The position numbers and the translations under genes were made by a program. Source: Oopsacas minuta (Eukaryota; Animalia; Porifera). From it: 64,000 nt of DNA. Each line of letters begins with the position of its first letter. Within the stretch, counting starts at the first letter, position 1. Under the pieces are notes generated by a model. It saw only the letters and a program-made list of their open reading frames with translations, searched no databases and was not told the origin of the DNA. Positions 10,701 to 31,700 of the stretch are shown in pieces. The stretch is from assembly GCA_024704765.1 (NCBI GenBank), contig JAKMXF010000303.1, forward strand, positions 391,897 through 455,896, written 5' to 3'.

Positions 10701-13700
10701 TCTCTAATAATAGTGAAATCGAGGTTGCGAGATAATACATCTTGATTGATAGAGATGTTTACTGAGGAGGGATCTATGCTAAACACGCCGTGAGGATGAT
10801 CATTAGCTCTGATAGTGATAACTACACTATCTACTTCGGAGTCTATCTCTGTAGGACCTGAAGTATTAACTAGTCGTATAGTAAATACTTGAGTATTCTC
10901 AGCTTGTGTGTCAGATAGTAGAGTGAAGGTGAGGTTATAACGAGGGTAATCACTGACTGCTCCATCCCAATGAGGCAGCTCTACATAACCTGACAGAGGA
11001 TCGATGTCTGAGGAGGTAACATTACCAGTAGCTTCCCAGTACACCAATACTGTAGAAAAGGTACCCTAGATTATAAGAAATAGTTAAGTCAATGAATAGC
11101 CTATTATAAACGATATTTCATAATACGTCGAGTTGAATCGAATATTCGAAATCAAAGCGAATAAAACTGAAAACGAACGAATATGTTAATATTCTAAAAC
11201 GAATCAGATACCTCTTACTATAATGTAACACATTGCAAATTACATCTACTGAAATACTCTTAAAAAGCAATTAATATGTATCTATGTACACTAACCGGGC
11301 TAAAGTATTATCCAACAATACAAAATATACAAATATTCTGTCTAAAGGTGGATAATTGCAAAATTCATGCGATTTGATACCTCAAAGAACTATTGAACGT
11401 TTCGGACTAAAATCTAGGAAAGTTTGTCATATTTGTATATTTCAAGCCACAATTTGCTCATTAAGTTGATAATGAGTTTATTAATTATTTAAAACTAATT
11501 ACATAAAATGAATATTCGATGCCCTAATTCTGATGGCATATTGGAATTCTATGGGTCTGAATTACCCCTCCACGAATATTTAGAATTGTTTAGATAAAAT
11601 CTTATTGAGTTGGTAGCATTATAATATTTATGCCACATGTGGCAGAAGTAGCCAAATCAAAAAGTGTGCTCCATTTAGGATGTGGGCACTGATGTTGCCA
11701 AAATCGGCTTTATTTCCAACTATGCAAATAAACAACAAGTAATTTTAGATAAACTCAAATGATCCTCATATAATATAGTGTTGTTGTTTCAATATTACAG
11801 TTATGTGCCACTTCTGCCACATGTGGCTCAAACATTAAAATGCTAACAACTCAACAAGATTTTCTCTAAACAATCCTAAATATTCTTGCTGGGGTGATAC
11901 AGACCTAACCTCGGGGCACATAGTGTCGAGTAGCGTAGCGACCAAAAGCATCAAGAAATTTAGTTGTGTTTAATACATAAGCTAACCTGAGGCACCAAAC
12001 TGTCGCTAGTGTTATATTAAAGGACAATGTATCTGGCATATTTATCCGTTGGATAAGAACTAAGGAGGAATATTTCGAACGAATACTAATGAATATGGTT
12101 ATACAGGTATTTTCACAAGTCATAAAAAGGATCTTAATTGACTCATTGATCATGGGGTTTATGACTAGAGAATTGAACGTTTGGTTAATGAAGAAGTCTG
12201 GTTTGTAATGCCTATTAAACAATAATAAGATTATAAATATACCAGTGTCCTCTGTAATTCAAGACCAACTGGTATGGATACTTCAGGCTCATCAAATTCC
12301 ACACTGACCAAGCCTAAAGCAAACCCCACAACTCCATAAGGCATGCCTCTGCCTGCTATAGTGATAGAAGCATTGACTCTGTTCATGTCAAGTGTTCCAG
12401 TACTGAATGCTAGACTAATGATATACTCCTCCTCTACTTCAGGTCCTGCTTCTGCTAGAATAGTTAGGATAATGAACTGCTGACTCACTCCATCTGCAAA
12501 TGTTAGTGTATCTGAGGTAGGAGTAATGTCTCTATGTCCCTGTATACACACAAGATAATTATAATATATTAATTATACAGCTATAAGACACGTGTTCACG
12601 GTAGACATTAATATTAACCAGGATAATGTGTCATCTGTCATGCTTTAGTGACTGTATCAGTTTCCTAGGATGCACAATTACACATTCAGTCAATATTATT
12701 AAAAGTAAAAATCCTGCTACTGCTACGCCCATGAGAGTAGGGTCCTATGGTATACATTAAACTCCCATTATTACGAAAATGCTCAATTCATTTCGTTTGT
12801 AAATGGAATAAAATCTTTCAAGCTATAGAGGGTAGAGAATCGCTTAGCTGCGTTATATCATACTTGGATATAACGGGGAGTTTACTGTGTGTATCCTCAT
12901 GTGAGTATACAACGAATGATTGTATTATTACATACAATGAACAGACCTGTTGTAAGGGTGTGGTAGGTACCACCTGGTACTGCACCTCTACACTTCCCAT
13001 GGTACCTCTTATCCTATCTACTGTAAGACTGACAGAGAGGTCTCCCTCACTCAAAGTTGGATTCCTAACATTAATACTGAGAGAGCCCTGATTGAATCCG
13101 ATAACTCCAAATGGATCATCACTGATCTCAATATCAATCTCAGCACTGGTGGTAGTACCTAAGTTTGCATTACCAGTAATGCTCTCTAAAATAATCGCGA
13201 AATTCTCTGTGTCTTCTGGTGTCGTATCATCAATGATTTGTAGCTGGATAGAGCTAGAGGCAGTACCGTCCTGGAATATTAGAGTTCCTATTAGGGTACC
13301 GGTCCCGGTATTGAAGTCTACACCCAGCAAAGCTCTCCCCTCTGATATCCTAAACTGGACGCTCTGCACCCCTATCGTACCTCTCAGACGGTTCACTCTG
13401 ATTAGAGCTAGCTCACCCTCACTGACAGAATAGACAGATTGAGAGAACTCGATGATACCGTATGGATCATCTGATTCTTCTATGGTTAGAGTGTGTATAG
13501 TAGATGTACCAAGGATAGGCGGAATGTTTATCTACAAACAGAAAATTAAGTACACTCAGTTAAGTGTTGGTATTATGGAATAGCTCCCAATCTCAGGCGA
13601 AAATCTAAAAAATACTAATCGGAGAGAGTAGAAGTAATCAATTAAAAGGTCCGTCATTCACACATTCGAAATTTTATCACAAAAGAGCAAGAATTGGATA

Positions 13701-16700
13701 ATCTGGGAATTCCAAACCGACAATATTTTTAATTTATAAACTAATTTTAAGTTGTATATTTACCTATAAGTACCTCTTATCTGAGGTGTATGTGTACATA
13801 CTACGATGAAACATCGAATTTTTCTCCCATGTTGCTAACTAATAATCTATTTACACGGCTACCTCTAACCAATAATTCCGGTATTAGTATCAACTGTCAA
13901 CTAACCTCAACGTTTCCAGGATTGAATGCTCCGGGAGGTAATGTCACTATAACTTGAGGATCAAAAAGAGATACATCAGTTAGAGTGAACTGTATAACCT
14001 CACTGAGTTCTGGTGTAGAGTCATCTAATAACGTTAAGTTTAAATAAGCTATTACCTGTCCGTCATCCATCAGGATATGCTCTTTTGACAGTAGGAAATC
14101 CTGTCCTATGACAGAAGTAGAAGTGCTCACTGTAAAGTTAACCAGAATGCTACCCACAGTACCAAGCTCTCTGAATACTGCTATCAGGGCAATACCATCA
14201 CTCTCTTGGTAGCTGCTTGTGACAGGAGACTAAATGATAGATATAATACGTAGTTAACATGTATTGCTCTGTCTGATCAGGATTACTTCTGGGGGTGGCT
14301 ACAAATTCAACGGCAAGTTTTTGAGAAAGGGGTCACGAGTGAACTACACAATAAGAGAATACACCGGCGTAAACTTCGTCAAAACAAACAGGGTGCCACG
14401 ATACTTGTTCATTCCCTAGTTATATATTTTTCTGAATAAATATTTCATTTTGTGAGATCAACTTGTCCTAATTTTTGTTAAGAGAAAATTTTTTCTCTCG
14501 CCACCTGCTGAGTTGAGTTTGTGGGGTTAGTTCGGTTTGAAAATGTCAGGGTGCTAGGCACCCGCCGCACACCCCAAGTTTACGCCCCTGAGAGAATATG
14601 GCATTTTATGGAAATAAACAAATTGAGAAATAGAGAATTAAGGAACACTTATTGTATACTGTACGAACTTCGAACTGTTTAGTGATATATATCAATACTA
14701 TGATATACGTATATATGTTCAGCACTATCCTATACTGGGTTCCACTAGTTAAATAGTTATTGTCAAACCTGAAATACAATCCTGCCGTGAGGCTGGTCAC
14801 TAGCTGCGACTACAAGAGTAGCCTCATCAGCTCCTGCATCTATTACAGGCATCTCATTACTACCAGCTATGCTAGCCGAGAGTAATTCTAGTGTAAATAT
14901 CTGAGCAACCTCAGGTATGTTATCAGTAATGGTCTGAAGTTCTATAGAAGTGGTAGTAGCACTGATATCAAACACAGCTGTTCCTGATGACGTCAGGAAG
15001 TGTTGAGTCACAACAACAGAGCCATCTTCTGGTACAATCCTCCACTGTACACTCACTCTATAGAATGCTCCCTGTGTCCGGAGGAGTGACACTTGTATAG
15101 ATGACCCCTCTTCTACCACAACATAGCTTGTAGATGGTGAGATAGATATACGACCAGTAGGATTATCATTAGGTAAGATGTATAGATAAGCTATACTACG
15201 TGATTGTAGTAAGTTACCTCCATTCGTAGCAGATGTCAATCTTACCTAAAGAGATTATTACTATAATTCATGTTAAAGTAGAATCAGGAGTGGAATCGGC
15301 TCACTTTTCACAGCCCGATCCGACCCCTAATCCGAATAACAAGATTCTTAACCTGCAGGCTCGGTGCCACTGTCCAGTTTTAACTGACCACATTTTAGTG
15401 CTGTTAGTACTGCACTGTTGCAATGGTAGTAAGCTGTCGTATGGACCACTTGGATATGGCTGCTATGGTTTCACAGGACACTTAATAATTCGTGGCACCC
15501 TGCCTGCCTGGTTTTGTAATAATTATAAATGATTAACTCCTAATCCGAACAATCAGTTTACTGAGCAGAGTTTTCTAATCTCATCACTCTTAGATGTATT
15601 GCATTACATCTCCGAATAAGATATAATCCAATACATCTAATCAATTCTGGACATTTTCTAACAGTGTATATTGCATCAGTAATTTCAGGTAAGTTCTAAT
15701 TCAAATTGTCAATATTATCGTTATAATACTAACAATAAAATCAAAATACTAACTTGATATAATACTTCCAATTCTGGAATTGTATCATCAACTAAAGATA
15801 TCTCAAAATCAGCATAAGTAGAGTTCTCAGGATAGATCAGCTGTCCAGACAGAGGAGTAACGTCACCATCAGCAGCAGCCTCCACTTCCCAGGATATAAT
15901 GACCTCTCCTATCAGTCCTTTAGTCCTTAACACTACCAGATTAGCGGAGGAAGGCTGTGTGGAATTCTCACCAGGTTCCTGTAATGAAAATGACTCAGAA
16001 CCCTCAGCAAAGTAGAACAGACCGTGTACGTCATCAGATTCATCAATAGTAACGATTAGCTCTGTATCCCCCAGTCTAGCTCCACCCACAGGAGTATGCA
16101 GTAGGATACGGAATGTTGTAGCCATCTCAGGTATAATATCATCTGTTATTCTGAACTCTATTGTATCTACTGCTTGTCCGTCAAGGAAGGTTAGAGTACC
16201 TGAAGTAGGGGTGTAGTCTGAGGGGGCAGTAGTGATGGATTCAAGAAGCCAACTAGCTCCGATCTGAAGGAAAAATAAATCTAAATTATTAGAATAAGGT
16301 AATCAACATACATTAGAACTCGTCTAAGACGTACACTCGGTGAATACATACTACTTTCAAACCAAAATTTTAGTCATTCATTTTAATACAATACAGATAA
16401 GAAGTACACTCGGATAGGAGGTTGAAATTTGTTGTTTACCTTAGAGATCGAGATAAATGTAAATGCTCGTTAATATAAACTCACCTCTCCGAAGTTACCA
16501 GAAGTTCTATTAATATAGATCACAACTATGCCAACACTCTCACTTATATGGTAAGTACCATCTTGTCCTAGAGTAACATCGAAGGATAGAATTCCTCTGA
16601 ACTCATCGTTAGGACGGATATGAATCTCTGCTACTTCTAAGGTGCTGTTCTTAGGTCTGGGACTGTCTGATACAGACCCTTGTCTATCTGACTCATCTAC

Positions 16701-19700
16701 CAAACTAGCTCTAACTATTCTAACCCAAAAAGTCTCAGTTATCTCAGGGGTTAGGTCGGGGAGAACAGATACAGTTATAGAAGCTACAGCAGCTCCACTT
16801 AACATGGTAGCTTGACTGGTAGCTAGGAAGAAGTCCTCTGTAGGATCTGCCTGTTGATTGAGTGGGTATGTGTAAGCTATCTGTGTTTCTAACTCTATGG
16901 TAATTGCTCCTAGAGAAAACAAATAAATATTTAGCGGAAAGATAAAAAGCCGCGATTATGTTAAATTTCTATGGAAAAACCGAAGACGGCTTAATATAGT
17001 TATTATGCTTGGAACAAATCCAAGGACACACTTGAATTGGTTAATTGTGTGAGTGTAACCAGTGAAAATTACCGCATTTAGTGTGGGTATTCGCTTGAAA
17101 TATTAATGAGCTCTAATATAATATGCAATGCTAAGTATAAAAATACGAGACATCTTACAAATAACTCCCACCGTATGCCATACATAATGCACCAGTTGTA
17201 TCGTATGACTCAACAAACCAATAAACTACGTACATACCTATGAGTCCATACTCTCTAATGATAGTGATGGTGACACTAGTAAGATTTCCAGTTTCTGGTT
17301 CATCTACAGTAACAGATCGAGAAGTAACAGAAAATGTAAGGAGTCCATGAGGATAGTCATTAGCTTGTATGGTAACAGCAGCAGAGCTAGTAGCAGGATT
17401 AATCCGAGCACCTAGGATACTGGGTACATCAGGATCTGTATTACCATCTGATACTATCTCAGTCAGAATAACAGTAGCTAATTCTGATAGCTCAATAATC
17501 TGATCATCTAACACTCGTATTGGTAGAGTTGTGGTGTTCATTCCAGACATGAATGTTAATGTATTCTGAGGAGAAATATATCAGTATTTAATACAAACAG
17601 TGAAAGCTACAGATGCGGGACCTCCTGAAGCGGGGAATCTCATAAAAACGGGGCGTAAATAGCTTCAACTACATCAATTTGATGCAAATGAACCTGAATG
17701 CACGGGAAGTAGGAAACTAATCCATAGGACCCAATCTCCCCACTTCGGGAGGTTTCAATGTACACGAGACGAGATCGTAAATAAAATGTATGTATTTTCG
17801 AATTGAGAAAGTTGTCCGAAAATTGCTAAGGAAAATGGAAGCGTTACAGTGAAACTATACACGGCTCCATTTTCCTAGCTCACCCATGTATTTCTAGTTT
17901 GTTCACCTATTTGGAAATAAAAGAGGCGAGGCAGAGTGTGATTACGTAACGATACACCATATAATGTTATAAATATTAGTATAATATTAATAACCTCTGT
18001 AGGAGAGAGATCTTCTACTGCTTCTCCAGTTACTAAGAATCTCACCACTACATCACCAAAAGTTCCTCCCAGCCGTATCACATCTAAAGTGAAGTCCTGC
18101 TGTCTGTCAGTGTCTTGTGAAGACAGTTCAGGTAGGATTACAGATAAACTCTCTGGAGAGAATCCAACCAATCCGTGAGCATCATCATTAGTAAGGATAC
18201 GTACTGTGAGTACTCCAGTAATTTCATCTACTACAGCTTGATTAGTAGGGTTAGTCAGCTGTATTATAAACTCGTCAGTAATCTCAGGTATGTCATCTGG
18301 ATATATCTGTATTAGCAGAGTAAGAATAGTTTGTCCATTGGCAAAGAATGAAGTCCCCCGTCTCTGGAAGAAGTCTGCACCTTCCCTCCAACTCCCTAGA
18401 GTCAGCACTAACGACTGGCTATCACCTTCTACAGCTGTTAAAATGAACAGCTGATTGTCTAGCTGCACTAGAGAGATATCCAAACACCTGATCACAGGCG
18501 TAGCAGCTAGCGTTAACTGTGTGAATACACCTGAGGATAATCTAAACACTTGAAGGCCATCTCCTCCCGTCACAGATATGAACGAATACAACACAGACTG
18601 AGATAGAAGTGATTCGACTGTATTTACAGTCCCTGGAATGTGAAACAGTTGTGAGATGGTAAATGTTTGTCCTACCCAGGAGAATACAAACAGAGAAGAT
18701 GCATTAGTAGCCAGTAAGTACGTGGTACCGTTTGTGTCAATAGCCAGAGATAGAGATTTAGCTGCATTCGTGTTGATACTTGATATACGTTCAAACCTGT
18801 AGAACAATGTATTGATTAAATAACGTATATACAGATACGCCTGTATTGGAAATCATGACGTCATAATATAATTAACTCATAACTAACACATAAATACATC
18901 GCTGAGTATCGAGTAATTTGAACACGAGATATATCACTAAATATATACACGCATAATAATATTAAGCTTCACTCTTTTGACTGTGAGAGTAGAGAGAGTA
19001 GAATACTCCCATCTGGTCTATTAGCTCTGGATAAGAACCAGATTCCACCATTTTACCTCCTGCCATGACGTAAATAACATCAAACGTTTCTAATCTTTCA
19101 AATCTATTCGTAGCGAATATAAAAGTTTTATCTTCGGTAACTCTGAACAGAGTATCTAGTATATGCAGTGCTGTAGCATGATCTAGAGCACTAGTACACT
19201 CATCTGCTACTACTACACTAGCATTAGCAAGTATAGCTTGAGCTATAGCTAGTCTCTGTTTCTGTCCTCCACTCATGTTCTTTCCATGTTTCTGCAGGAG
19301 ACTGCCATAATCCAAAGGTAGTGACATCACCCACTGATGGAGGGAGACAGATTTACAGGCTTCTATCATCTTATCCTCACTCACTGATACATTCACTACT
19401 TTAAGGTTATCACTTACTGACATATTAAAGGTATGATGGAATTGAGGAATTACACCAAACAGACCTTTTGTTCCAAATTCCATATCACTACTACCGTTTC
19501 TAAGCACTACATTACCACGAGTAGGTTCCATGAAGCCAAGGATTAAATTGAGGATGCTAGATTTCCCAGATCCACTTGAGCCCACTATAGCAACCTTCTG
19601 TCCGAATGGAATGTTCAGGTTAATATCGAAAAGAGACCAGATACCAAACTCAGGAAAGTGAGACAAATATATATTATCTAGCTGGATATGTGGTCTGAGT

Positions 19701-22700
19701 TCCTTGTTAAGATTTGAATTAGTAGTCTCATTCAATTCTGAGATATCTGTTCTCTTCGAATCTAACTTCTCAAATGTTTTGAGTCTCGAATAAGCTGCCG
19801 CCCCTTTACTCATCAATTCATTCATGTTGAGCAGCTCCACAGGAGTACGTATTATCCTGAAAAAGATAAACAGTGCACCTAGAGTGAGTTCGAAATCTAG
19901 ATTAAAATACAGTATGAGTATTCCTGGTAGCAGATAAGAGATGCTGATTAGTAAGAGATTGACTAAGTTCATCAGATAAGCTAATACTCTAGTCACACCG
20001 TATGCCCTCCACACAACAGAACCATAGGTTATGAAGTTCATCTTTTCTCTCATAGACTCTATCCAATGATGCTTCAGATTATAATGCAGATTCTCATAAA
20101 ACCCCTCGTAAATATCCTGAATACGTAGAGTTAGTCCGGAGATAAGAGCATTCTTACTTGCCTGACTCTTCCGTAGGAAATAGCTCAGTACAGATCCCAG
20201 CAAGTACAGCACTACATAAGATATTGAGAAGAATATGAGATAGAAGTAATGGATAATTATACAAACTACAATACTTCCAAACAATAGGATAATAAACCTC
20301 CCCAGGAACACAAACACCGTACTGATCACCTGCTGTAGGGCATCTATATCTTCTCCAAATAGATGGATCAGATTGACACTTGAAAATTTATGAGAATGAT
20401 TGCTGTCCATGCTATGTAAAGATGAGAATGCTATCCTACGGTGCTTACTACCGTAAGCAGTAGCTAGATAGCTAAGCAGAGCATTTATTGTCAGATCTGT
20501 TAAGACCAGACCAACGTTAATACCTACGAGAATAGTACAGGTTATCAGAAGTGGCTTCTGATTCTCAAATGTAAAGAAGGCAGATCCATCAGTCACATTT
20601 CCACAGTTAATTATCGGAGTAGCAATGAGATAGATAACTGTAGCTTCAACCTGCCCTCCATACACAAATGCAGATACATCAATTAACATTACCAATACTG
20701 TGAGAATTACTATAAGGTAATGATCCAGGAACAGATCTACTGTTAATAATTTCAAAATAAATTTCAATGTTCCGTAAGATAAAACATCTTCACATTCTCG
20801 GTTTTTAAGGAATATTCTCCATTTTTGATTGTGGTAAGACAAATTATGTCCTGAAAAGCGAAAGTTTGTATTCGAGTCAGATTTATAGAACTGATTAAGC
20901 AGATTATTTATACCACGAGTACCAGAAGTTGTGAAGACATAGTTCATAAATGTAAACCCAACAGTATTGTAAAGAGCTAGCTCCTTGTCTCCCTCAGGAG
21001 GGGTGAGATGATCTAAGAAATCAATAGATTCCTCCTGCTGTAATAGAGATTGTATAGCTTCTATGTCAAAACAGGATTCCTCTCCTACCTCAACACACAC
21101 GTGATTGTATATCATAAGGAATAGACCATCAACAAACAGATTATCTGATGCTATTTGTGGGTAGAATCGTCGTAGCTCGCATAGAAAGATAGATTTGAAA
21201 TACTCCTCAGGGCTGGTACCTTGTTTAAGATAATCTACAAATACTTGTGTGGTAACTGCCTTCTTTTTGTCAGCTCCACTCGTAGGTAAGTCTAGAGTAT
21301 TCTGAAGTTTGTATCTGAATAAAAAATCTTTTCTATCCAATTCCATCTTCTGTACTAGACTTAAGTCTCCATTATTTGAATCAAGCTCTATGGATAGTTC
21401 CTCCGCCATCATTAACAATAATATTACATTAAATAAATATCAATATTTTAAAATATATTTAGAGCTAAACGAACTTTTGAATTGAGCATTCAATGCATTG
21501 AAAGGCTATTGAATGAGAACATATTTCCCGAAATAGAATATAAAGTCAATTTGAATAGTATATAGGGAAATTTTAGTTTAATTCAGTGGTTCTCAACTTT
21601 TTATAGCCTCGTTCTCCCTATATGACCGCTTCAGTTGCTATCTTCCCTTCCAAACTTTAGCATAATTTTGGATTCTTTGCAGCAATTTAGTAGGGTAAGA
21701 CTTAGTAAGTAACAAGTGCAATCAGTGCGAAGCTTGTGCTCGCATATTTGATACGATCATACGAGCTCAGTAATGTTTACTTCTTTATTAGATAGTAAAA
21801 ATATATTCCTCCTCGATATATGCATGAATTCCTCACCTGTTAAGAACGACAGGTATAAAGTACTAACCTTGTATTATCAGTAGACCATTGATAAAGTGTA
21901 GACGGAGTATCTGATGTCTGTTGAGCTGTATCATAGCTGTTTGCTATGATTAGATATAACGAATTATCACTTTCAAATGTGAGTGCTTGTTCAGCTCCTC
22001 GTGTCACGATTTGTTGTACATTCTGTTCAGAGAAGAGGCCAGTAGCACTGTCCCATACATACAGTATACTGCTTGTATCTGTATCTCCTGACACATCTGA
22101 GAAAATACAAGCAAACAAGTAGAGTAGTCCGTCAGTAGAGAATGTATGTAAATGAGATACTCTAGCTTGAGAAATAGACTGTATGGACGAGTAGGAGAGA
22201 GATGTGGAGTTGTATTGGAATAGTTCTATTGAATTGGTATAGGAAGAAACCACTAGATAGTCTTTGTTACTCCATGGAAAACTGTGCCAAGATGTTGCCT
22301 ATAAAAATGAATTCATAGGATCTTGTCATCTTGTAATTACAATAAATGACAAGCATAAATATTAGCACTTGTTAATGATATATAGAATATGGATTCATTC
22401 CTGGAAACGTGGATAACTCAATAACCGGTGACCCAATTTGGCGATATCGACCATGTTTCGAACACCAGCTTAAACTAGACAAAGCTTCAAAGAGCTTCAC
22501 AATATATTTTCTATAACTCCATTCATTCGACCTGGTTATGAGAATTCATGCGCTTTACAAGCTTAGTATAGGTTATATAGCTATCATACCGTCAAGACAT
22601 TGAATGTCTGTGTATGCTCATATATTCCCCTCCAGCTGTACAGTCTTGAGGTATCTCCATCCACTGAAATAGCATACTCATTACCAGCCTCATTCCCGAA

Positions 22701-25700
22701 GAAAGATAACCATTCAGAGCTGCTAGACAGACGTTGTGTTGTAGATAGAGTATATTGATCTCCTGGATAGTTAGAAGTTGCGGTATCAGGAAATAATTCC
22801 CAATCTACACTCACTGCAGCATTAAGACCATCTTTCCTATCAATAACTATCTGAATTAAATCTGAATCTTCTTCAACTAAGCCATAATTCAAGCTAATCT
22901 GACCATCTGGTTGCAGCAAGTATGCCTGAAATCTACCGTAAGGATTGTCACTCTCACTTACATGTACTTCTACACTTGTTCTATTTCCAAGAAGAGTTCC
23001 CTCCGGAGAGACAGGAGGTAGAATCTCTACAACAAACTGCTCCACTAACTCAGCTATTCCATCTGCTACTATATCCAGTACAAGATTACCAGTAGTCTGT
23101 CCGTCCTGGAATAATACCTGTCCTACAGCTGGAGCTAGATCAGCTGGTAATATCGTGGGTAACACGCGGTACTGTAGCATTACTTCTCCAAGAGACGAGA
23201 AGGTCCTGAGTATTGGTATCTGCAAGATAGTACCCTCAAGTAGTAGGGATACCTCTGGGAATGTTGGGTCAATCGAGAATACACCCCTCCCTAAATCAGA
23301 TCCGAGGATAATTATAGTGAGAGTAGAATTCTCCCCCCGGATAACTCCAGAAGGAAGTTCCTCAGTCAATCCAATGTTTATAACCTCTCTGCTCTCTGCT
23401 AATTCATCTTCTAGAATCTCAACCTCAATCTCTCTGCTACCCAGCTCACCATCACTCCATGACAAAGACACAGATTGAAATAGATAGTCTATGTCTCTGG
23501 TAGCAAGAGGAAGACTGTTCGGCATGCCTGTGATCTCAACACGACAGCTGGCAGGCCCGAAGCTACCCCCAACCCGTGCTACCGTAACATTGAGTACCCC
23601 GGCATTCTCTTGTACTTCTAAACTTCCGAATAAGAATTGTAGGATTCCTTGTGGTCCGTCGTTCTGAGGAATATATATCTCAGCGAGATTTTTCTCCCCT
23701 AAAGTGGGTGGCTTCAGGGCTGCAGGATCGGTATTAGGAGGATCTGTCAGTTCTACGCTTACTAATTTCAAAATAAACACTTCCGCGAATTCTGGTACAT
23801 TATCATCAACAACAGTTAGAGGGAGTATGAGTGAGGTAACACCATCAGGGATAATTAGTGATTGAACTCCGGCTGTTATATCGGATTGAGAGGACAGAGA
23901 TCTCTGTTCAGGTCCCACTACCGGATTCAGAGATGTCAGATTTCCTATTTCTGATTCATAATATAACCTGAGATCACCAAGTACACCAAACATCCTTGAT
24001 ACGAGTATTGTAGAAGTAGTCCCTTCACCTAGTGTATATACTACCTGACTAGAAGTCAGCTCCACGACTCCATGAGGCATATCAGATTCCGCTAGCGTAA
24101 TGACAGCAGACAGGAGAGAGGTGTCAGGATCTAGGATAGCTCCTCCTGTCTGTGCTATATCAACAGAAGTAACCCCTGTAATATTGAGAATATATACTTG
24201 TGGAGTCTCAGGTAGTGCGTCATCTCTAGGTAACAAGTAAATAAAGGTGTAAGCTAGACCATCTTCAAACAGGGCAGTCCCACTCGTATTCGTAAATTCC
24301 TCCTCAACTCTGTACCCTGTGAGTACCCATGTGACCAATGCTTGTCCAGCTGATCCAACTTTCCGTATAATCTGAATAGGATTAGATCTGTCTTCCTCTA
24401 CTACTGAGTTCAGTGATTCTATAGCAAAGCTTATTATACCTCCTCCGTTATCATTAGCATCTATCTGAACAGTCACACTAGAACCTATTCCCTTTATTAT
24501 CTCTGCTCCCCCTGTCGGTTCATCCAACTGGATTATTATAGTCTCATCTCCCTCAGCTGTTAGAATGGATAGTATGAAATATGTATAGTGCATTCAAATT
24601 AAGAAATTCTTATACAGTACGTCCTCGCTAATCCGAACAGCACTGTTCTAATTGCAAAATGCATTGAAACAATCCTATAGGATCTAGGAGTACAATTTTT
24701 CGAAAATTGTATAAATGATGATAAGGCTGACAAAATGTGTAATATAGTGTATTAAGTATTTCTCCGCAGTAGAATTGGATATAATTTTGTTTTTTTTATT
24801 TTAGAACATTTCCAAAGGTTGTATAACCTGTTGGGATTAGCGAGGGCCTACTGTATAATTATTTACTAACCAATATTATCTTCTTCAATAAAGAAAGATA
24901 ACGGTTTCTGGTCTTCTCCAGGATTGAAGACGAATGTAGCTTCTGCTAGAGCAAAGTCTAGCACGGAGGTAGCACTACCAACTAAACTGTAGTGAACGGA
25001 TACAGTCCCAAATGTCCCATGATCTCTGTATATCGTCCCTATAATAAGATCTGTATAATTCTCCTTGATAACCAGTGAGTGTATGTCGCCAGCAAGAGAT
25101 ACTCTGAATAATCCATTAGGATAGTCAGAGCGAGCAATCTCAATGCTAGCTTCCACCACATCTCCAAAGCTAGGGATATTCATAGGATTTGTTACAGACA
25201 TGTTCAGTAGAGATAGACCAGTGAGGGTAACTCTGAACAGCTCTCCTAGCTCAGGTACATTATCTGCGACAATTTGTACCTATAGAACATAGTATAATAT
25301 GATAGATGAAGTACAGTAGAACTCGGATAAGATGTACTAAATTTTATTTGCTAAGGAGGTACAGCTTATCCGTGTTAAACTGTAAAATAAAGATTTACAT
25401 TAATTAAGTACTTGTACACCGTATAAAATCAACAACAAATAATATGGTAGATAGGGGAATATCTTCTCGGTTTCAAAATATATTAAGATAGGATTGGAAT
25501 AAACTATAAAAACATACGTATACAGTGGCTAGTTTAACATGGCTAAACCCCTTTTTAAATGATTACATTTTGCAAATAGTTCAAATGCAAACAAAGAGCC
25601 ACTGCAACAAAACAAATTGTAAGCTACATACTCTGGGACAACACTCTGTATTTAATAATATAAGCAAGTGCTCTTCTAAATAAATGGTCATTCTACAGAC

Positions 25701-28700
25701 ATGGACCTAAGGCTTGATATTTAAGAATACAGCTACAATCAAACTACGGCTACCGATACGACTGGCGAAAAGCGGCCGCTATGTGCAGGATGACCATTAC
25801 ACATAGGTAGCCGTTAAGCAGTGCGACTGTAGCAATGTATATTGTCTTATTCTCGACTTTAGTTTTATCTACTACAGCCTCAGTACTGCTTTGAATGAAT
25901 AATGACAACAGTGTATGCATGGTGGTATAGCATACTGTAGTATTAGTAGTCTTTAATAAGCTACCAAAATAGTAGCATGAAGTGGACTACTATCCAGAAT
26001 ACGGCACTGAGTACGGTTCTCTTACAACGTACATTATAAACGTATAAACATGAGAATAATTGTGAGACTTTTGTATACAATGCTCTTTCCTATGAAAAGT
26101 CAATATTATTAGTAAATTATTCATGAGTACTATACTATATTGCAAAAGAAAGTGTGTATGAAATGAAATATACTTATAAGATGTATTTGCTAGGTTCCTA
26201 AAAATAGTTATAATAAATAGTAATTGTGTCATACAAACGAATAGAATTGTATGTAGAAAGATGGGAATACTTGAGAAGATCAAGGAAATAGAGCAGGAAA
26301 TTGCTCGAACACAGAAAAATAAAGCTACAGAATATCATCTGGGATTACTGAAAGCTAAACTCGCAAAATACCGTGCTCAGCTGTTGGAACCACAAGGGGG
26401 TAAGGGTGCTGGAAAGGGGGAGGGATTCGATGTTATGAAATCAGGAGACGCAAGAGTAGCTCTCATCGGATTCCCTTCTGTAGGCAAGAGTACTCTACTG
26501 AGCATGATAACACAGACTAGCAGTGAGGCTGGTTCTTACGACTTCACAACACTAACATGTATTCCAGGTGTTATCAGGTGAATAATACTACTGAGTATAC
26601 TGTAATCGTACATTCCATGTACCCCACTGACTATATAATGATGTGGTAACATCTCAGTTTAGTAAATATTTTTATCTATATTTGGCAAGGCAATTTTTAG
26701 GTTCTATTAACTAAATTTTTACAAAGAATATAATCCGCGATATTAATAAAATCGATTCTAAAGATATTTTAACGATCCTTTCGAAATAGCTTTGTTAATT
26801 TAACAGTGGTTATCATCTCACATATGGCAAATGAACATGTTGAATAGAGTATAAGACATTTCACTAATATGCTATGTATATTCCTGTTAATACTGTATGC
26901 GTATTTGAGTGCAATCAACTTGTTTGTAGATACAACGAAGCGAATATCCAGTTGCTAGATCTCCCTGGTATTATTGAGGGGGCAGCACAGGGGAAGGGTC
27001 GTGGCAGACAAGTGATAGCAGTAGCTCGTACAGCTGATCTAGTCCTAATGATGTTAGATTCAGGCAAAGGAGAGATTCAGAAAGAACTGTTAACAGCTGA
27101 GTTAGAACAGGTAGGGATCAGGCTGAACAAGGGACCACCTAACATATATTTCAAGAGGAAGAAGGCAGGGGGACTGGGATTCACTGCTACTTGTCCTCTT
27201 ACACATCTAAGTGAGAAGTTGGTACAGCTCATACTTCATGAGTATAAGATATTCAATGCTGAGGTATGTAATAGAAATACTACGCCAAAAGGGAACATAG
27301 GCCTGAAAATAGGGCTCTTCAAACACTGGTCTAGGAGACCATAAATTGCATAATTTCTATGGAAATTGATCCTAGGCTAAAAATTTTGGGCATATTAGGA
27401 GCCAATATTCCATACTGCAGTGAGTTTCGACAGATTTTTATAGATTAGTGTTTGATCAATTTTTTGTGCCTCAGAACAGATTTCCATTAACAATTGGTCC
27501 GCTGACCAAAATTCAGAGGACCTTTTCGTGAATTATTAAATTGAATAATCTACTAGTAGTAAGTAGTAACATAATCATAAATACACAAGTAACATGAGTG
27601 TACTTATGTGTCAGGTATTAGTGAGAGATGATTGTACAGCAGATGACCTAATAGACGTAATACAGGGTAACAGAGTATACATGAAGTGTCTATACGTATT
27701 CAACAAGATAGACACCATCTGTCTAGAAGACGTAGACAGACTGGCTAGACAACAAGAGAGCGTGGTGATAAGTTGTGGACTACAACTCAACATGGATTAT
27801 CTATTAGAGCTGCTATGGGATAAACTCTCACTCATGCGGATATACACTAAGAAACGTGGTCAGCCACCTGATTTCACTGACCCTCTGATCCTGAGGAGTG
27901 GAGCTACAGTAGAGCACGTGTGTCATGCTATTCATAGGACAATAGCAGATACCTTCAGATACGCATTGGTGTGGGGTATATCTACTAAGTATAGCCCGCA
28001 GAGGGTGGGGAAAGCACATGTAGTCAGTGATGAAGATGTTCTGCAAATTGTTAAGAAGTGAACAAGTTGGTTATAAGCGAGATCTTATGTGAGCAAATAT
28101 ATTAATTAGTTTATATTATCAATCTTTTAAGTAAATAAATAGTATAGTGTATATGAATATCATAGGTAAAGGAATTAGAAATGAATTACTTCGCAAACAA
28201 ATGAATACAATTTGTAAATTAGAATAACATACATGCAGCGAAGATAAAACAGTAGACTCCGCTTAATAGTAAAGGTGTTGGCCCGATTAACCGACATACT
28301 TTATTCCACTCAATAGGGTCAAATAGCCTGGTCCCGATGTGACCCTTTTAAACGGAGTCTACTGTATCCAAATTGCATAGATTTCCACTACACGATTATA
28401 ATTATTAAAAATCTCAATTGTTGTTTGTTTGTTTGTTTGTTTGTCTGTTGACAAGGAAAGGATTTACGGTATGCAATTTTGAAATTGTCACATAACTATG
28501 TATTATCGTGTTTATCAAAGAAGTGAATAGAATTCAATAAAACTTCACTAAATATATCAAACATACGAATCCGATTTTCACACTTTTGGATTAATCATAT
28601 GTAAATTTATTGTTGTTTTTATGAAAATAAAACAAATTTCAAAATTGAGGTAGAATCACACTTTCAAAGGCTATACAGGAGTAATCGAGTATGCCGAGTC

Positions 28701-31700
28701 CGAATATAGTATTGTAAACAATATATTGTGAATATTTGTTTACTTTTAGGTACATAAAATAAACAAATTTCAATATTGTTGTAGAATCATACTTTCAACG
28801 ATTGTACCGGCATACTTGAGTATGCTGAGTCTGAATATTGTAAACAACATCAATATCATTAAATCTCAATTGTTGTTTGTCTGTTTGTTGACCGTTGAAA
28901 ACCTCGAGGCGCAATGTGCCGAGTTCATCGCGAAGCGACGAGCCAAAGACTCGTATTTATAAAAATTGGTTCTGATTATCTATTATTATGCGAATATAAT
29001 TTTTATAGGAAGAATGGGAAAGCAGTGCAAGTAGAGCTAAACTATTTAATTAATTATAAATAAACATTTAATTGTTAAATAAAACATCATTCGAGATAAT
29101 TTGATTTGTTTCAAATAAAAGGCATTCTAGCAACTCCTACCCTACAGCATGGAACAAAGCGAAAGTGAAGCTAAACTAACAGAAGCTAAGTCTATAATAG
29201 GAATAGTTATAGAAGCAGCTAGAGAGAGACTCAGAGAGGTTAGCAATAAGATATGGGAGAACCCAGAAATAGCAATGGAGGAAGTAAAGGCACATTTTCT
29301 TTTAACAAATTTCTTAGAAAAAGAAGGATTTGAAGTAGAGAGATCATTTGTATTGAAGACAGCATTCAGAGCTACATTCTACACTCCAGCTAGTAAGACT
29401 GATGCTACAGCTGTCAACGCTTGTATAGTGTGTGAGTATGATGCATTACCCGAAATAGGACATGCTTGTGGACACAATCTCATAGCAGAAGCAGGACTAG
29501 CTGCTGCTATTGGTATCAAAGCAGTGATGGAGAAGTATCCAGATCTCAAACTCAAGTTAACTGTCATGGGTATGTAGACGTTTATACTATAATGAGCAAA
29601 TTATACTTTAGTAAAGTGGCCCAGTGCTAAATTGACTGCGTTCGTAACTAGCAATGCGGATAACCAATGTATAGCTTAACATACTTAATATTCGTGAGGT
29701 GGCGGGCAAATACTGATTAATTAATAAGCTATTCACTCTTTACAAAGGTACCCCAGCTGAAGAAGGTGGAGGCGGCAAGATCCACTTGATAAGAGGAGGA
29801 GCATTCAAAGGTGTTGACTTTGCTATGATGGTTCATCCGTTTCCATTCAATGCAATATACCCTAATGTGCTAAGTGTAGTCCGGATTAATATCGTGTACA
29901 AAGGTAAATCAGCTCATGCAGCAGCATTCCCATGGGAGGGAGTGAATGCTTTGGATGCAGCAGTGAGTGGATACACATCTGTGTCTCATATGCGACAGCA
30001 ATTGAAGCCTGCATGGCGAGTTCATGGTATTATTACCAATGGAGGAATAAAACCGAATATAATACCGGAAATAGCAGCAATGAACTATTATTTGCGAGCA
30101 CCGAACAACCTGGAGGTGGAAGAGCTCAGGCATAAAATTTGTGGGTGTCTTCAGGTAAATATACTCTCGTTTATGATACGTAATTCCGAGTACATCTGAT
30201 TAGAGGACAAGTACTATGTGAAATATCAATTGCATACATGGACTAATAATTTTTAGTAAATACATAAGGAAATAAGGATAGAAGTATGAACATAGACCGT
30301 TCCTGATCATAGAACTTCAACTTTACCAAAGAAATGACATAATATCACTGTAGTAACATTGTGGCCAAGTTTGATCATATGACCATAAGTTGAGAAACCC
30401 TTCTATCTATTATATAACCGTTGAGAGCTAATCTTTCACTAAGATAAAAATAAATTTTACAAATAGTTACCAGTACTGGTTACGTGAAAATACTTAATTA
30501 GTACACAAGGATAAACGTAATGATTATCTAAACTAGGCAGGAGCTACAGCTACAGGATGCACAGTAGAGATTTTGGAAAATGATATTCCTTATTCTAATA
30601 TGAAGTCTAATTCAATCCTGGGAGAGTTATACCGTAGTAATGTAATGCCGGGGATAAAGTACGGAGACATAGAGTCAGATAGGAATACACCTAGCTTCTC
30701 TACAGACATGGGGGATCTGTCTTATCAAGTTCCTAGCATACATCCTACCTATTCTATCAATACTAACTATCCTAATCACACCAGTGGATTCACTGATGAT
30801 GCCAACACGTCTGAATCTCACGAGCTTACTCTGAAAGCAGGTGTGTGTATGGCTCGTACAGCTGTTGAGGTAGTGTTCAAGCCAGGAGTATTAGAGCAGA
30901 TTAAACAAGAGTTCAGTAAACAGTAATTAGATAATACGTACAAATATTATTAATTGATTAGTCATTATACTTATATACTCGTATAACTGTTAATAATGTC
31001 TAGTGGTAATAACCAGGCGGAAGTTCCTATTGGAAGGGTGAGTAAGGATAATCAGACAATTGAGCTATGTAAATGTATTGTCATGAAACAGGATCGGGAA
31101 CACACAATGCAAAACCAAGTATTTGATCGGGTATTCAAATTTAGACAAAATAAGAGCAATTAGAGCTCGGTACATTGTTCGAGGAGCGTGGAGCAAGGGC
31201 ATAAAACAATTTCCTACAGAAATAAATAATTAGCAACTCCTACAGCATGGAACAAAGCGAAAGTGAAGCTAAACTAACAGAAGCTAAGTCTATAATAGGA
31301 ATAGTTATAGAAGCAGCTAGAGAGAGACTCAGAGAGGTTAGCAATAAGATATGGGAGAACCCAGAAATAGCAATGGAGGAAGTAAAGGCACATTTTCTTT
31401 TAACAAATTTCTTAGAAAAAGAAGGATTTGAAGTAGAGAGATCATTTGTATTGAAGACAGCATTCAGAGCTACATTCTACACTCCAGCTAGTAAGACTGA
31501 TGCTACAGCTGTCAACGCTTGTATAGTGTGTGAGTATGATGCATTACCCGAAATAGGACATGCTTGTGGACACAATCTCATAGCAGAAGCAGGACTAGCT
31601 GCTGCTATTGGTATCAAAGCAGTGATGGAGAAGTATCCAGATCTCAAACTCAAGTTAACTGTCATGGGTATGTATTCTCCATATTTAATTTGTGCACAGT

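What the first reader, a model, noticed from the sequence alone, without database searches (positions are those of the whole stretch)
20780..21412. Half-ABC exporter carries an unexplained N-terminal domain resembling a catalytically dead peptidase-MA/gluzincin fold
Seen: about 200 soluble residues precede TM1. The segment [11 protein letters not shown]...[11 protein letters not shown]...[27 protein letters not shown]...[17 protein letters not shown] follows the spacing of peptidase-MA-like domains (HExxH...EGxA...Y...F..YL...G...LL...G.....W), with both His lost (CELRR) and E replaced by D. Established: eukaryotic half-ABCB transporters normally carry targeting peptides or TMD0 here, whereas protease-domain-fused exporters are a bacterial theme (PCATs, with a C39 domain). 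Inference: a substrate-binding pseudo-peptidase fused to an exporter, possibly a horizontally acquired bacterial-type architecture. This is the best candidate in the window for an undescribed system.
Basis: inference. Interest (0 to 1): 0.72.

Follow-up and report, generated by a model that had tools for sequence, protein, structure and literature searches.

The report
ABC exporter with dead metallopeptidase-like head
An intron-less animal gene encodes a membrane export pump whose first ~215 residues are predicted to fold like a zinc peptidase that has lost its zinc-binding residues; it belongs to a small, conserved, so far unnamed family, so its architecture may be new, but its function is untested.

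Summary
Window 18962..21412 (minus strand) is one uninterrupted 816-aa ORF. It has about 215 soluble residues, then six membrane helices, then an ABC ATPase domain.

Two independent predictions place the N-domain with clan-MA (gluzincin) peptidases, closest to Pfam PF13485 Peptidase_MA_2: the ESM Atlas model and my AlphaFold2 model (pLDDT 75.8). There is no HExxH motif and no conserved metal ligand. Sequence-level support is marginal (PF13485 E=0.03, below threshold), and the residue mapping CELRR=HExxH is inferred.

The "bacterial-type, horizontally acquired" idea is not supported:
- No bacterial protein shares the N-domain among 1.84 billion representatives.
- Codon use matches the host gene.
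- All relatives sit on large contigs; the four non-orthologous loci examined have animal-type or generic eukaryotic neighbours.

About 17 such proteins exist, all unnamed and called as single ORFs; the 16 placed in an NBD tree form one clade. The window gene fills an intron of an ADGRV1/VLGR1-like gene on the same strand. That position is conserved in two other species, and dN/dS is about 0.1. Its subgroup also lacks the H-loop histidine.

My best reading is an ABCB/MsbA-type half-exporter whose dead peptidase domain docks cargo or regulates transport, analogous to HlyB's C39-like domain. Expression and function are untested. An unchecked first-reader note, s1-305140, describes a similar ABC on another piece of this genome.

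The parts
18962..21412 (-). Complete intron-less ORF of 816 aa plus stop: half-size ABC exporter (N-domain, TMD, NBD)
   Evidence: ORF list and sequence. Pfam ABC_tran covers residues 597-743 at 1.8e-25, and ABC_membrane is weak at 285-519. NCBIfam's best hits are MsbA-like and lie far below their cutoffs. dN/dS is about 0.1 in all three domains.
20768..21412 (-). N-terminal soluble domain (residues 1-215): predicted gluzincin / Peptidase_MA_2-like fold without zinc ligands
   Evidence: No Pfam or PDB sequence hit for this protein. AF2 model pLDDT 75.8. Fold matches to PF13485 clusters and to M9, M30 and M1 peptidases. Two distant family members give sub-threshold PF13485 hits, E 0.031 and 0.056.
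21167..21181 (-). C78-E79-L80-R81-R82: the position proposed to correspond to HExxH, with both His absent
   Evidence: Family alignment shows xxE(L/I)x(R/Q) in most members and never HExxH. It lies at the C-terminal end of predicted helix 68-81. Equivalence to HExxH is inferred from order and spacing.
21122..21130 (-). D95-G96-L97 of the NLFVDGLF motif: the position proposed to correspond to the gluzincin 'xEGxA' third-ligand helix
   Evidence: G96 and L97 are invariant in 14 sequences. Position 95 is D, E or N. It lies at the start of predicted helix 92-108.
20969..20971 (-). Y148: invariant tyrosine, possibly equivalent to the catalytic Tyr of M1/M30 peptidases
   Evidence: Invariant in 14 sequences. 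Its spacing from the pseudo-HExxH (66 residues) resembles lugdulysin H245 to Y315 (70 residues), taking the residue numbers from the title of PDB 7bb9. This is an inference.
19733..20767 (-). Transmembrane domain (residues 216-560), six predicted helices, very divergent
   Evidence: Hydropathy peaks at 232-250, 287-305, 369-387, 483-501 and 498-525. TM4 (~388-410) is read from the sequence and did not reach the hydropathy cut-off. Pfam ABC_membrane scores 17 bits here but 33-72 bits in relatives. phmmer of the TMD finds almost nothing outside the family.
18965..19732 (-). Nucleotide-binding domain (residues 561-816). Walker A is at 19559..19582. The H-loop residue N769 is at 19106..19108, where the usual histidine would be.
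   Evidence: Motif columns: Walker [10 protein letters not shown]-loop Q657, signature MSGGQ, Walker B VVVADE and D-loop SALD are intact. The H-loop reads T-N in all five orthologues and in paralogue P0122, and T-H in the other relatives.
18797..21836 (-). Host intron of the ADGRV1/VLGR1-like gene that contains the ABC ORF on the same strand. The ORF fills 81% of it.
   Evidence: Donor CAG|GTGAGG at 21837/21836 and acceptor ...TTCTACAG| at 18797, read. Flanking exons carry EPTP and Calx-beta domains. The same arrangement occurs in L001 and L002.
2625..39716 (-). Exons of the host ADGRV1/VLGR1-like adhesion GPCR gene (context, not part of the ABC protein)
   Evidence: Pfam hits: Laminin_G_3 plus Calx-beta (38181..39716), Calx-beta (several exons), EPTP (21840..22253), and GPS plus 7tm_2 (2625..3977).

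Best explanation
The locus is a real, selectively maintained gene of an animal genome. An earlier, untested scan note calls that genome a glass sponge.

The gene encodes a half-size type-IV (ABCB/MsbA-like) ABC exporter. Its cytosolic N-terminus is a ~215-residue domain with the fold of clan-MA (gluzincin) zinc peptidases, closest to Pfam Peptidase_MA_2, but without HExxH or any conserved metal ligand. That makes it a pseudo-peptidase.

It belongs to a small, unnamed family with the layout N-domain, TMD, NBD and usually a C-terminal tail. All members found are single ORFs on eukaryotic contigs.

The window's subgroup differs from the rest of the family in three ways:
- It has lost the C-terminal tail.
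- It has Asn in place of the H-loop histidine.
- It sits inside an intron of an ADGRV1-like gene.

Inferred mechanism: the protein dimerises, with itself or with the 886-aa paralogue. It binds ATP normally but probably hydrolyses it slowly. The dead peptidase domain, which lies on the same side of the membrane as the NBDs, would serve as a docking or gating module for a peptide or protein cargo, or as a regulator. This parallels the inactive C39-like domain of HlyB-type exporters.

Shown here: gene integrity, selection, family membership, domain order, predicted fold similarity, and absence of the zinc site. Inferred: homology with gluzincins, the residue equivalences, cytosolic placement, and any cargo-binding role.
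For: Gene and protein:
- ORF and ABC domains.
- Six TM helices and a soluble N-domain.
- Five orthologues at 59-77% identity plus an N-terminal fragment.
- dN/dS 0.06-0.18 with saturated dS in every domain.

Genomic setting:
- Conserved nested position between orthologous host exons in two other assemblies.
- A second study holds a ~97% identical copy joined to the downstream host exon.

Family:
- The N-domain profile finds eight more ABC half-transporters and no bacterial counterpart among 1.84 billion representatives.
- An NBD tree puts all 16 N-domain-bearing proteins included (13 distinct members plus three near-identical cluster copies) in one clade, SH-aLRT 95.

Fold:
- ESM-model and AF2-model searches both give PF13485 clusters at TM 0.62-0.65 over 187-203 residues.
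- PF13485 is the only Pfam family hit by more than one member.

Active-site and ATPase motifs.

Precedent: an inactive peptidase-like N-domain on an ABC exporter that handles an uncleaved cargo is described for the HlyB CLD (PMC8277102, read).
Against: - No RNA evidence is available: no RNA run holds the stretch. Expression, transcript ends and the mode of expression from inside an intron are therefore unknown.
- Foldseek against the PDB found nothing significant; best E was 0.45.
- Sequence links to peptidases are below threshold: PF13485 scores 14.5 bits against a cutoff of 32.4. hhalign against E. coli PepN gave no signal, and a PDB profile search gave only chance antibody hits.
- The model is almost all-alpha and lacks the beta-sheet that carries the substrate-binding edge strand in classical gluzincins, so peptide binding in the canonical manner is not assured.
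- The full-length AF2 model failed (pLDDT 36), so the position of the domain relative to TMD and NBD is not modelled.
- H-loop Asn may mean a poor ATPase, or a regulatory protein rather than a transporter.
Confidence: 0.6

Rival explanations
1. The N-domain is a lineage-specific helical domain unrelated to peptidases. The gluzincin resemblance would be a generic helical packing or a bias of the structure predictors, and the domain would serve dimerisation, trafficking or NBD regulation.
For: - Foldseek against the PDB found nothing.
- Invariant residues are Gly, Leu, Pro, Tyr, Phe and Trp, which are typical of a structural core.
- No beta-sheet is predicted.
- hhalign against PepN was negative.
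Against: - Three searches from two independent models converge on the same clan.
- Matches cover about 180-200 of 225 residues, whereas unrelated hits cover about 50-70.
- PF13485 is the only recurring Pfam family at the sequence level.
- It also appears among the language-model neighbours of two members at 23% identity.
- The motif order E..R, 12 residues, (D/E)G, then Y fits the gluzincin order.
Confidence: 0.2
2. The whole architecture, or the N-domain alone, came by ancient horizontal transfer from bacteria. It was then fully adapted to the host genome and spread by duplication.
For: - Every member was called as a single uninterrupted ORF by a prokaryote-style gene caller. No neighbour's intron count was compared.
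- All PF13485-like structural neighbours in the Atlas are bacterial clusters.
- The NBD sits among bacterial-type half-exporters in a tree built from a biased sample.
- NCBIfam's best models are MsbA, HlyB and PCAT types.
- Other notes of this scan list several HGT candidates in this genome (untested here).
Against: - No bacterial protein with this N-domain, alone or fused, reaches E<=1e-3 among 1.84 billion representatives. The one bacterial hit is a spurious Ig-repeat protein.
- RSCU r=0.93 and GC3 0.35 match the host exons.
- The eukaryotic ABCB family is itself close to MsbA-type exporters, and no ABCB reference set was in the tree, so its placement says little.
- In the PDB, the less divergent relatives match ABCB19, ABCB1 and pgp-1 halves about as well as bacterial exporters.
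Confidence: 0.2
3. The ORF is not an independent functional gene. It could be a bacterial contaminant or mis-assembly, a decaying insertion, or an intron-borne ORF that is never translated.
For: No RNA run holds the stretch. It lies wholly inside an intron of another gene, only ~165 nt upstream of the next exon of that gene.
Against: - Assembly contigs span the ORF and both host exons, and an independent study has a 97% identical copy with the same downstream exon.
- The ORF is intact in at least five species despite saturated synonymous change, with dN/dS about 0.1.
- The nested position is conserved.
- Codon use is host-like.
Confidence: 0.04

Closest known systems
HlyB-type type-1-secretion ABC exporters with an N-terminal C39-like domain (CLD), and PCATs with an active C39 peptidase domain
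   Same: - A half-size type-IV ABC exporter.
- An extra cytosolic N-terminal domain derived from a peptidase fold.
- In the CLD case the catalytic residue is lost, and the domain handles a cargo that is not cleaved (PMC8277102).
- PCAT1 is the best single-stretch PDB sequence match of the ABC core, at 149 bits.
   Different: - The accessory domain here is predicted to be a clan-MA metallopeptidase fold, not the papain-like C39 (PF03412), which was not detected.
- The host is an animal genome, not a bacterium.
- No membrane-fusion or outer-membrane partner is expected.
- No cargo is known.
Pfam PF13485 Peptidase_MA_2 and other clan-MA gluzincins (M9 collagenases, M30 lugdulysin/hyicolysin, M1 aminopeptidases)
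   Same: Predicted overall fold over about 180-200 residues. The order of landmark positions also agrees: helix end with E..R, then a (D/E)G-containing helix start, then a later invariant Tyr.
   Different: - No HExxH and no conserved third ligand.
- Below Pfam's threshold.
- Essentially all-alpha in the model.
- Fused to a membrane transporter. I found no description of such a fusion.
TAF2 (TFIID subunit), an M1-aminopeptidase-like protein without peptidase activity
   Different: TAF2 is a nuclear scaffold of about 1200 aa with the full four-domain M1 layout and has no link to transport. That TAF2 is catalytically inactive is from my own knowledge and was not tested here.
Eukaryotic ABCB half-transporters (ABCB6-10, TAP1/2, TAPL)
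   Same: The TMD-NBD order and a type-IV exporter core. The less divergent relatives match ABCB19, ABCB1 and pgp-1 halves in the PDB search. TAP1 also has a non-His H-loop (own knowledge).
   Different: Those proteins carry a membrane-embedded TMD0 or a mitochondrial presequence at the N-terminus (own knowledge), not a ~215-aa soluble folded domain. No named ABCB orthologue turned up in three word-index searches.

Membership tests
ABC type-IV exporter (ABCB/MsbA-like half-transporter) | NBD with Walker A, Q-loop, LSGGQ signature, Walker B D-E and D-loop | tested here: met
   GSSGSGKS, Q657, MSGGQ, VVVADE and SALD are all present. Pfam ABC_tran hits at 1.8e-25.
ABC type-IV exporter (ABCB/MsbA-like half-transporter) | H-loop (switch) histidine | tested here: not met
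   The H-loop reads T768-N769 in all five orthologues and in paralogue P0122. The other family members have T-H.
ABC type-IV exporter (ABCB/MsbA-like half-transporter) | Six-helix ABC_membrane (PF00664) domain N-terminal to the NBD | tested here: met
   Five hydropathy peaks plus a sixth helix (TM4) read from the sequence. PF00664 scores only 17 bits here, below its cutoff, but 33-72 bits in family members aligned to it.
Clan MA gluzincin / Pfam PF13485 Peptidase_MA_2 | HExxH zinc-binding and catalytic motif | tested here: not met
   No HExxH occurs in residues 1-225 of any of the 14 members. The proposed site reads CELRR, TELKR, THLRR, KEIQR and similar.
Clan MA gluzincin / Pfam PF13485 Peptidase_MA_2 | Third zinc ligand Glu on the following helix | tested here: not met
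   The candidate position 95 is D in most members, E in P0005 and N in P0121. That this is the equivalent position is itself inferred.
Clan MA gluzincin / Pfam PF13485 Peptidase_MA_2 | Catalytic-domain fold | tested here: met
Clan MA gluzincin / Pfam PF13485 Peptidase_MA_2 | Score above Pfam's gathering threshold | tested here: not met
   There is no hit for the window protein. The best family member scores 14.5 bits (E 0.031) against a cutoff of 32.4.
PCAT / CLD-bearing T1SS ABC exporters | N-terminal Peptidase_C39 (PF03412) or C39-like domain | tested here: not met
   No PF03412 hit even at E<=10. The fold matches are to metallopeptidases, not papain-like folds.
Animal ABCB half-transporter subfamilies (ABCB6-10, TAP/TAPL) | Orthology to a named animal ABCB clade; TMD0 or presequence at the N-terminus | tested here: inconclusive
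   No named orthologue appeared in three searches. The N-terminus is soluble and acidic. The NBD tree lacked a proper ABCB reference set.

The most novel reading that the evidence does not exclude
These animals, possibly sponges, have a previously unrecognised export pathway. In it, a dedicated ABC half-transporter family uses a dead gluzincin domain to recognise leaderless peptide or protein cargo in the cytosol and hand it to the translocation path. That would be a eukaryotic, metallopeptidase-derived counterpart of the bacterial PCAT and CLD type-1 secretion exporters. The H-loop-less glass-sponge pair (816-aa and 886-aa paralogues) would work as a slow-cycling heterodimer.
Probability: 0.15. 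Interest if true: 0.85.

Novelty: new variant of a known kind. Interest (0 to 1): 0.58.

Why it matters
ABC exporters with an N-terminal peptidase or pseudo-peptidase are a classical bacterial theme (C39 and CLD). To my knowledge, and in the paper searches run here, no exporter fused to a metallopeptidase-fold domain has been described, and none of this kind in animals.

If the domain is a cargo or regulator-binding module, the family offers a second, independent case of a protease fold recruited to aim an ABC pump. It would also be a handle on non-classical secretion in an early-branching animal lineage.

The family is a clean natural experiment on the H-loop. One subgroup replaced the switch histidine with Asn and still stayed under strong purifying selection.

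It is also an example of a long-lived gene nested in an intron on the same strand as its host gene.

Tried and rejected
- Full-length AF2 with the five orthologues gave pLDDT 36 and was unusable.
- Foldseek of the N-domain model against the PDB found no match at E<=0.001.
- phmmer of the N-domain and hmmsearch of the 14-sequence profile against PDB sequences found nothing, or only chance antibody light chains at E of about 0.4.
- Pfam at E<=10 on the five orthologues' N-domains found nothing.
- hhalign of the family profile against the E. coli PepN catalytic domain gave probability 0.2, which is uninformative.
- I could not obtain Peptidase_MA_2 sequences as references, so a proper profile-profile test was not possible.
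- The search for RNA runs found none, so expression could not be tested. Read laying therefore only checked assembly and linkage.
- The word-index search with the 13-sequence alignment did not enlarge the family.
- P0007, P0139 and P0008 scored well in that search but lack the N-domain.
- P0128, a bacterial Ig-repeat protein, was rejected as a spurious N-domain hit.
- Paper searches for Oopsacas plus ABC transporter, PF13485, the assembly accession, and Peptidase_MA_2 found no relevant description.
- Rejected: recent bacterial contamination or HGT, because of host-like codon use, synteny and eukaryotic neighbours.
- Rejected: TMD0-type membrane extension, because there are no hydrophobic helices before residue 232.
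- Rejected: mitochondrial presequence, because the N-terminus is acidic.
- Organism names were coded by the tools.
Full report
**What is at the coordinates**

Window 18962..21412 on the minus strand is one uninterrupted ORF. It has 816 aa from the first ATG, and the ORF listing gives 818 aa from an upstream TTG.

Pfam finds ABC_tran at residues 597-743 (1.8e-25) and a weak ABC_membrane match at 285-519. NCBIfam's best models are MsbA-like, CydC, HlyB/LssB and PCAT-type exporters at about 160-170 bits. That is far below every family cutoff.

Hydropathy gives five clear transmembrane peaks between residues 232 and 525; the sixth helix (TM4, ~388-410) is read from the sequence. Nothing membrane-like precedes residue 232. 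The observation of about 200 soluble residues before TM1 of a half ABC exporter is therefore correct.

**It is a real, constrained gene in an animal genome**

The ORF lies inside an intron of a large minus-strand gene. That gene's exons carry Laminin-G, many Calx-beta domains, EPTP, and GPS plus 7tm_2, which is an ADGRV1/VLGR1-like adhesion GPCR.
- From the sequence, the intron runs from the donor CAG|GTGAGG at 21837/21836 to the acceptor ending at 18797.
- The ORF is on the same strand and fills 81% of the intron.

Five full-length orthologues (59-77% identity) and one N-terminal fragment exist on large ENA contigs.
- In two of these assemblies (L001, L002) the gene lies between the orthologous EPTP exon and the next host exon.
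- In L003 a 33-aa remnant of the EPTP exon survives just upstream. L005 shows no host exon.

Pairwise dN/dS is 0.11-0.18 for the N-domain, 0.06-0.09 for the TMD and 0.08-0.11 for the NBD. Synonymous sites are saturated.

Codon usage correlates with the host exons (RSCU r=0.93). GC3 is 0.35, against 0.29-0.38 for host exons.

Assembly contigs span the ORF and both flanking exons. A run from a second study and a second organism label carries a ~97% identical copy joined to the downstream host exon.

No RNA run holds the stretch, so expression is untested.

The tools hide organism names and I did not verify this.

**The N-domain defines a wider, unnamed family**

The N-domain gives no Pfam hit at E<=10 and no PDB sequence hit.

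A profile of the five N-domains was searched with HMMER against 1.84 billion representatives. It found ten proteins at E<=1e-3:
- the query's own cluster;
- eight other proteins of 886-1102 aa;
- one bacterial Ig-repeat protein that I reject as spurious.

All eight carry the domain at their N-terminus, followed by ABC_membrane and ABC_tran. Seven of them (all but P0122) also have an unannotated C-terminal tail of 170-320 aa. A search with one of them added four more orthologues.

None of these proteins has a name from any source. All were called as single ORFs. The four checked (P0121, P0122, P0126, P0138), on contigs of 0.7-7 Mb, have eukaryotic neighbours: RPE65, ATP synthase F6, PEX11, SIR2, phosphomevalonate kinase, thioredoxins or a reverse transcriptase. 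P0125 sits on a 9.5-kb contig with no informative neighbours.

In an NBD tree of 94 sequences, the 16 N-domain-bearing proteins included (13 distinct members plus three near-identical cluster copies) form one clade (SH-aLRT 95).
- P0122 is an 886-aa paralogue found in the same assembly as orthologue P0005. It is sister to the 816-aa group (SH-aLRT 99).
- The tree is a quick search on a sample biased by how the hits were collected. It lacks a eukaryotic ABCB reference set, so I draw no conclusion about the family's outgroup.

**Fold of the N-domain**

The full-length AF2 run with five sequences failed, with pLDDT 36. With the 14-sequence N-domain alignment (A5), AF2 gave pLDDT 75.8 and pTM 0.74. 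The model is essentially all-alpha, with helices at 19-40, 55-63, 68-81, 92-108, 117-129, 142-177 and 191-212 and a small hairpin at 185-190.

Three structure searches agree:
1. The ESM Atlas's own model of this protein, residues 1-225, is nearest to clusters that are 96-98% PF13485 Peptidase_MA_2 (TM 0.63, 203 and 194 aligned). It is also close to DUF5700, a putative Zn-dependent protease.
2. My AF2 model searched in the Atlas by shape gives PF13485 clusters at TM 0.62-0.65 with 187-198 aligned.
3. An exhaustive VIA-align comparison with 48,161 PDB representatives puts only clan-MA peptidases, or their inactive relative TAF2, in ranks 1-10:
   - ColT and ColG;
   - several M1 aminopeptidases;
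   - ACE.
   M61 peptidases, LTA4 hydrolase and thermolysin follow further down the list.

Against this:
- Plain Foldseek on the PDB found nothing significant.

Sequence evidence is marginal:
- Scanning each of the 14 members alone, PF13485 is the only Pfam family hit by more than one member (P0127 E 0.031, P0124 E 0.056). Both hits are below threshold.
- PF13485 clusters are also among the language-model neighbours of P0001 and of P0121, at scores the tool calls leads only.
- hhalign against E. coli PepN gave no signal.

**Is it catalytically dead?**

Yes, whatever the exact register. No HExxH occurs in any member. The only invariant residues are G96, L97, P139, Y148, F155, G164 and W198.

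- CELRR would stand for HExxH. Across the family this site reads xxE(L/I)x(R/Q).
- NLFVDGLF would stand for the xxNEGxA helix.
- CELRR ends helix 68-81, and D95-G96 begins helix 92-108.

The mapping also fits the aligned ranges to lugdulysin. There the catalytic Glu is E242 and the catalytic Tyr is Y315, per the title of PDB 7bb9. The spacing H245 to Y315 is 70 residues, and R82 to the invariant Y148 is 66 residues. This remains an inference, because no residue-level structural alignment was available to me.

**The ATPase**

Walker A, Q-loop, signature, Walker B (D-E) and D-loop are intact. The H-loop histidine is Asn in all five orthologues and in paralogue P0122, while the other relatives keep T-H. 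The substitution therefore predates the duplication that gave the two short paralogues without a C-tail, and it has been kept under purifying selection. From general knowledge of ABC ATPases (HlyB H662, MalK H192), I expect ATP binding with slow hydrolysis.

**Mechanism proposed**

In type-IV exporters the N-terminus lies on the NBD side of the membrane. The pseudo-peptidase should therefore be cytosolic, next to the elbow helix.

The closest functional precedent is the C39-like domain of HlyB-type exporters. It is an inactive peptidase fold at the N-terminus of an ABC exporter that handles a cargo which is not cleaved (PMC8277102).

I therefore propose a cargo-docking or gating role for a peptide or protein. 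A purely regulatory or dimerisation role is the main alternative. Nothing here tests binding.

**Horizontal transfer**

- There is no detectable bacterial counterpart of the domain or of the fusion.
- Composition is host-like.
- The family is monophyletic and lies on eukaryotic contigs.

An ancient transfer cannot be excluded:
- All members were called as single uninterrupted ORFs.
- The structural neighbours of the domain are bacterial.

**Verdict**

The dead-enzyme status holds, the HGT idea is not supported, and function is open. The gene belongs to an undescribed family, which I class as a new variant of the known theme 'ABC exporter with an N-terminal (pseudo)peptidase'.

An unchecked first-reader note, s1-305140, describes a similar ABC on another piece of this genome. 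It probably corresponds to the 886-aa paralogue type.

Noticed in passing
L002:12610-14148 (+): In the most distant orthologue's locus, a second intron-less transporter ORF lies among the Calx-beta exons of the same ADGRV1-like gene, about 2 kb downstream of the ABC gene. It is 512 aa with a Pfam MatE hit. I did not see it in the window.
   Followed up: no
window 2625-39716 (-): A very large ADGRV1/VLGR1-like adhesion GPCR gene with unusually long exons (up to 2 kb). It carries Laminin_G_3, many Calx-beta domains, EPTP, and GPS plus 7tm_2.
   Followed up: partly
L003:7408-7506 (+): In the species of P0003, the ABC gene is no longer flanked by recognisable ADGRV1-like exons. A 33-aa remnant (54% identity, E 2e-6) of the EPTP exon sits about 500 nt upstream of it. 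This hints that the nested position is ancestral and that the host gene decayed or moved there.
   Followed up: partly
L007:6001-8661 (+), protein P0122: An 886-aa paralogue in the same assembly as orthologue P0005. It has the same N-domain, the same H-loop Asn and no C-terminal tail, and it sits in a cluster of thioredoxin-domain ORFs.
   Followed up: partly
C-terminal tails of P0121, P0123-P0127, P0129 (170-320 aa after the NBD): The non-glass-sponge-type relatives carry long C-terminal extensions with no Pfam domain. These are absent from the window's subgroup.
   Followed up: no
window 56603-57679 (-): An intron-less 358-aa WD40 beta-propeller ORF, with best Pfam matches to WDR3/THOC3-like propellers.
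   Followed up: no
L004:11694-12506 (+): An ORF with OTU and SH3_Tf2-1 (retrotransposon-type) domains lies downstream of the P0003 copy on one of two near-identical contigs (L003, L004). The two contigs differ in this flank, so they may be haplotypes or a recent duplication.
   Followed up: no
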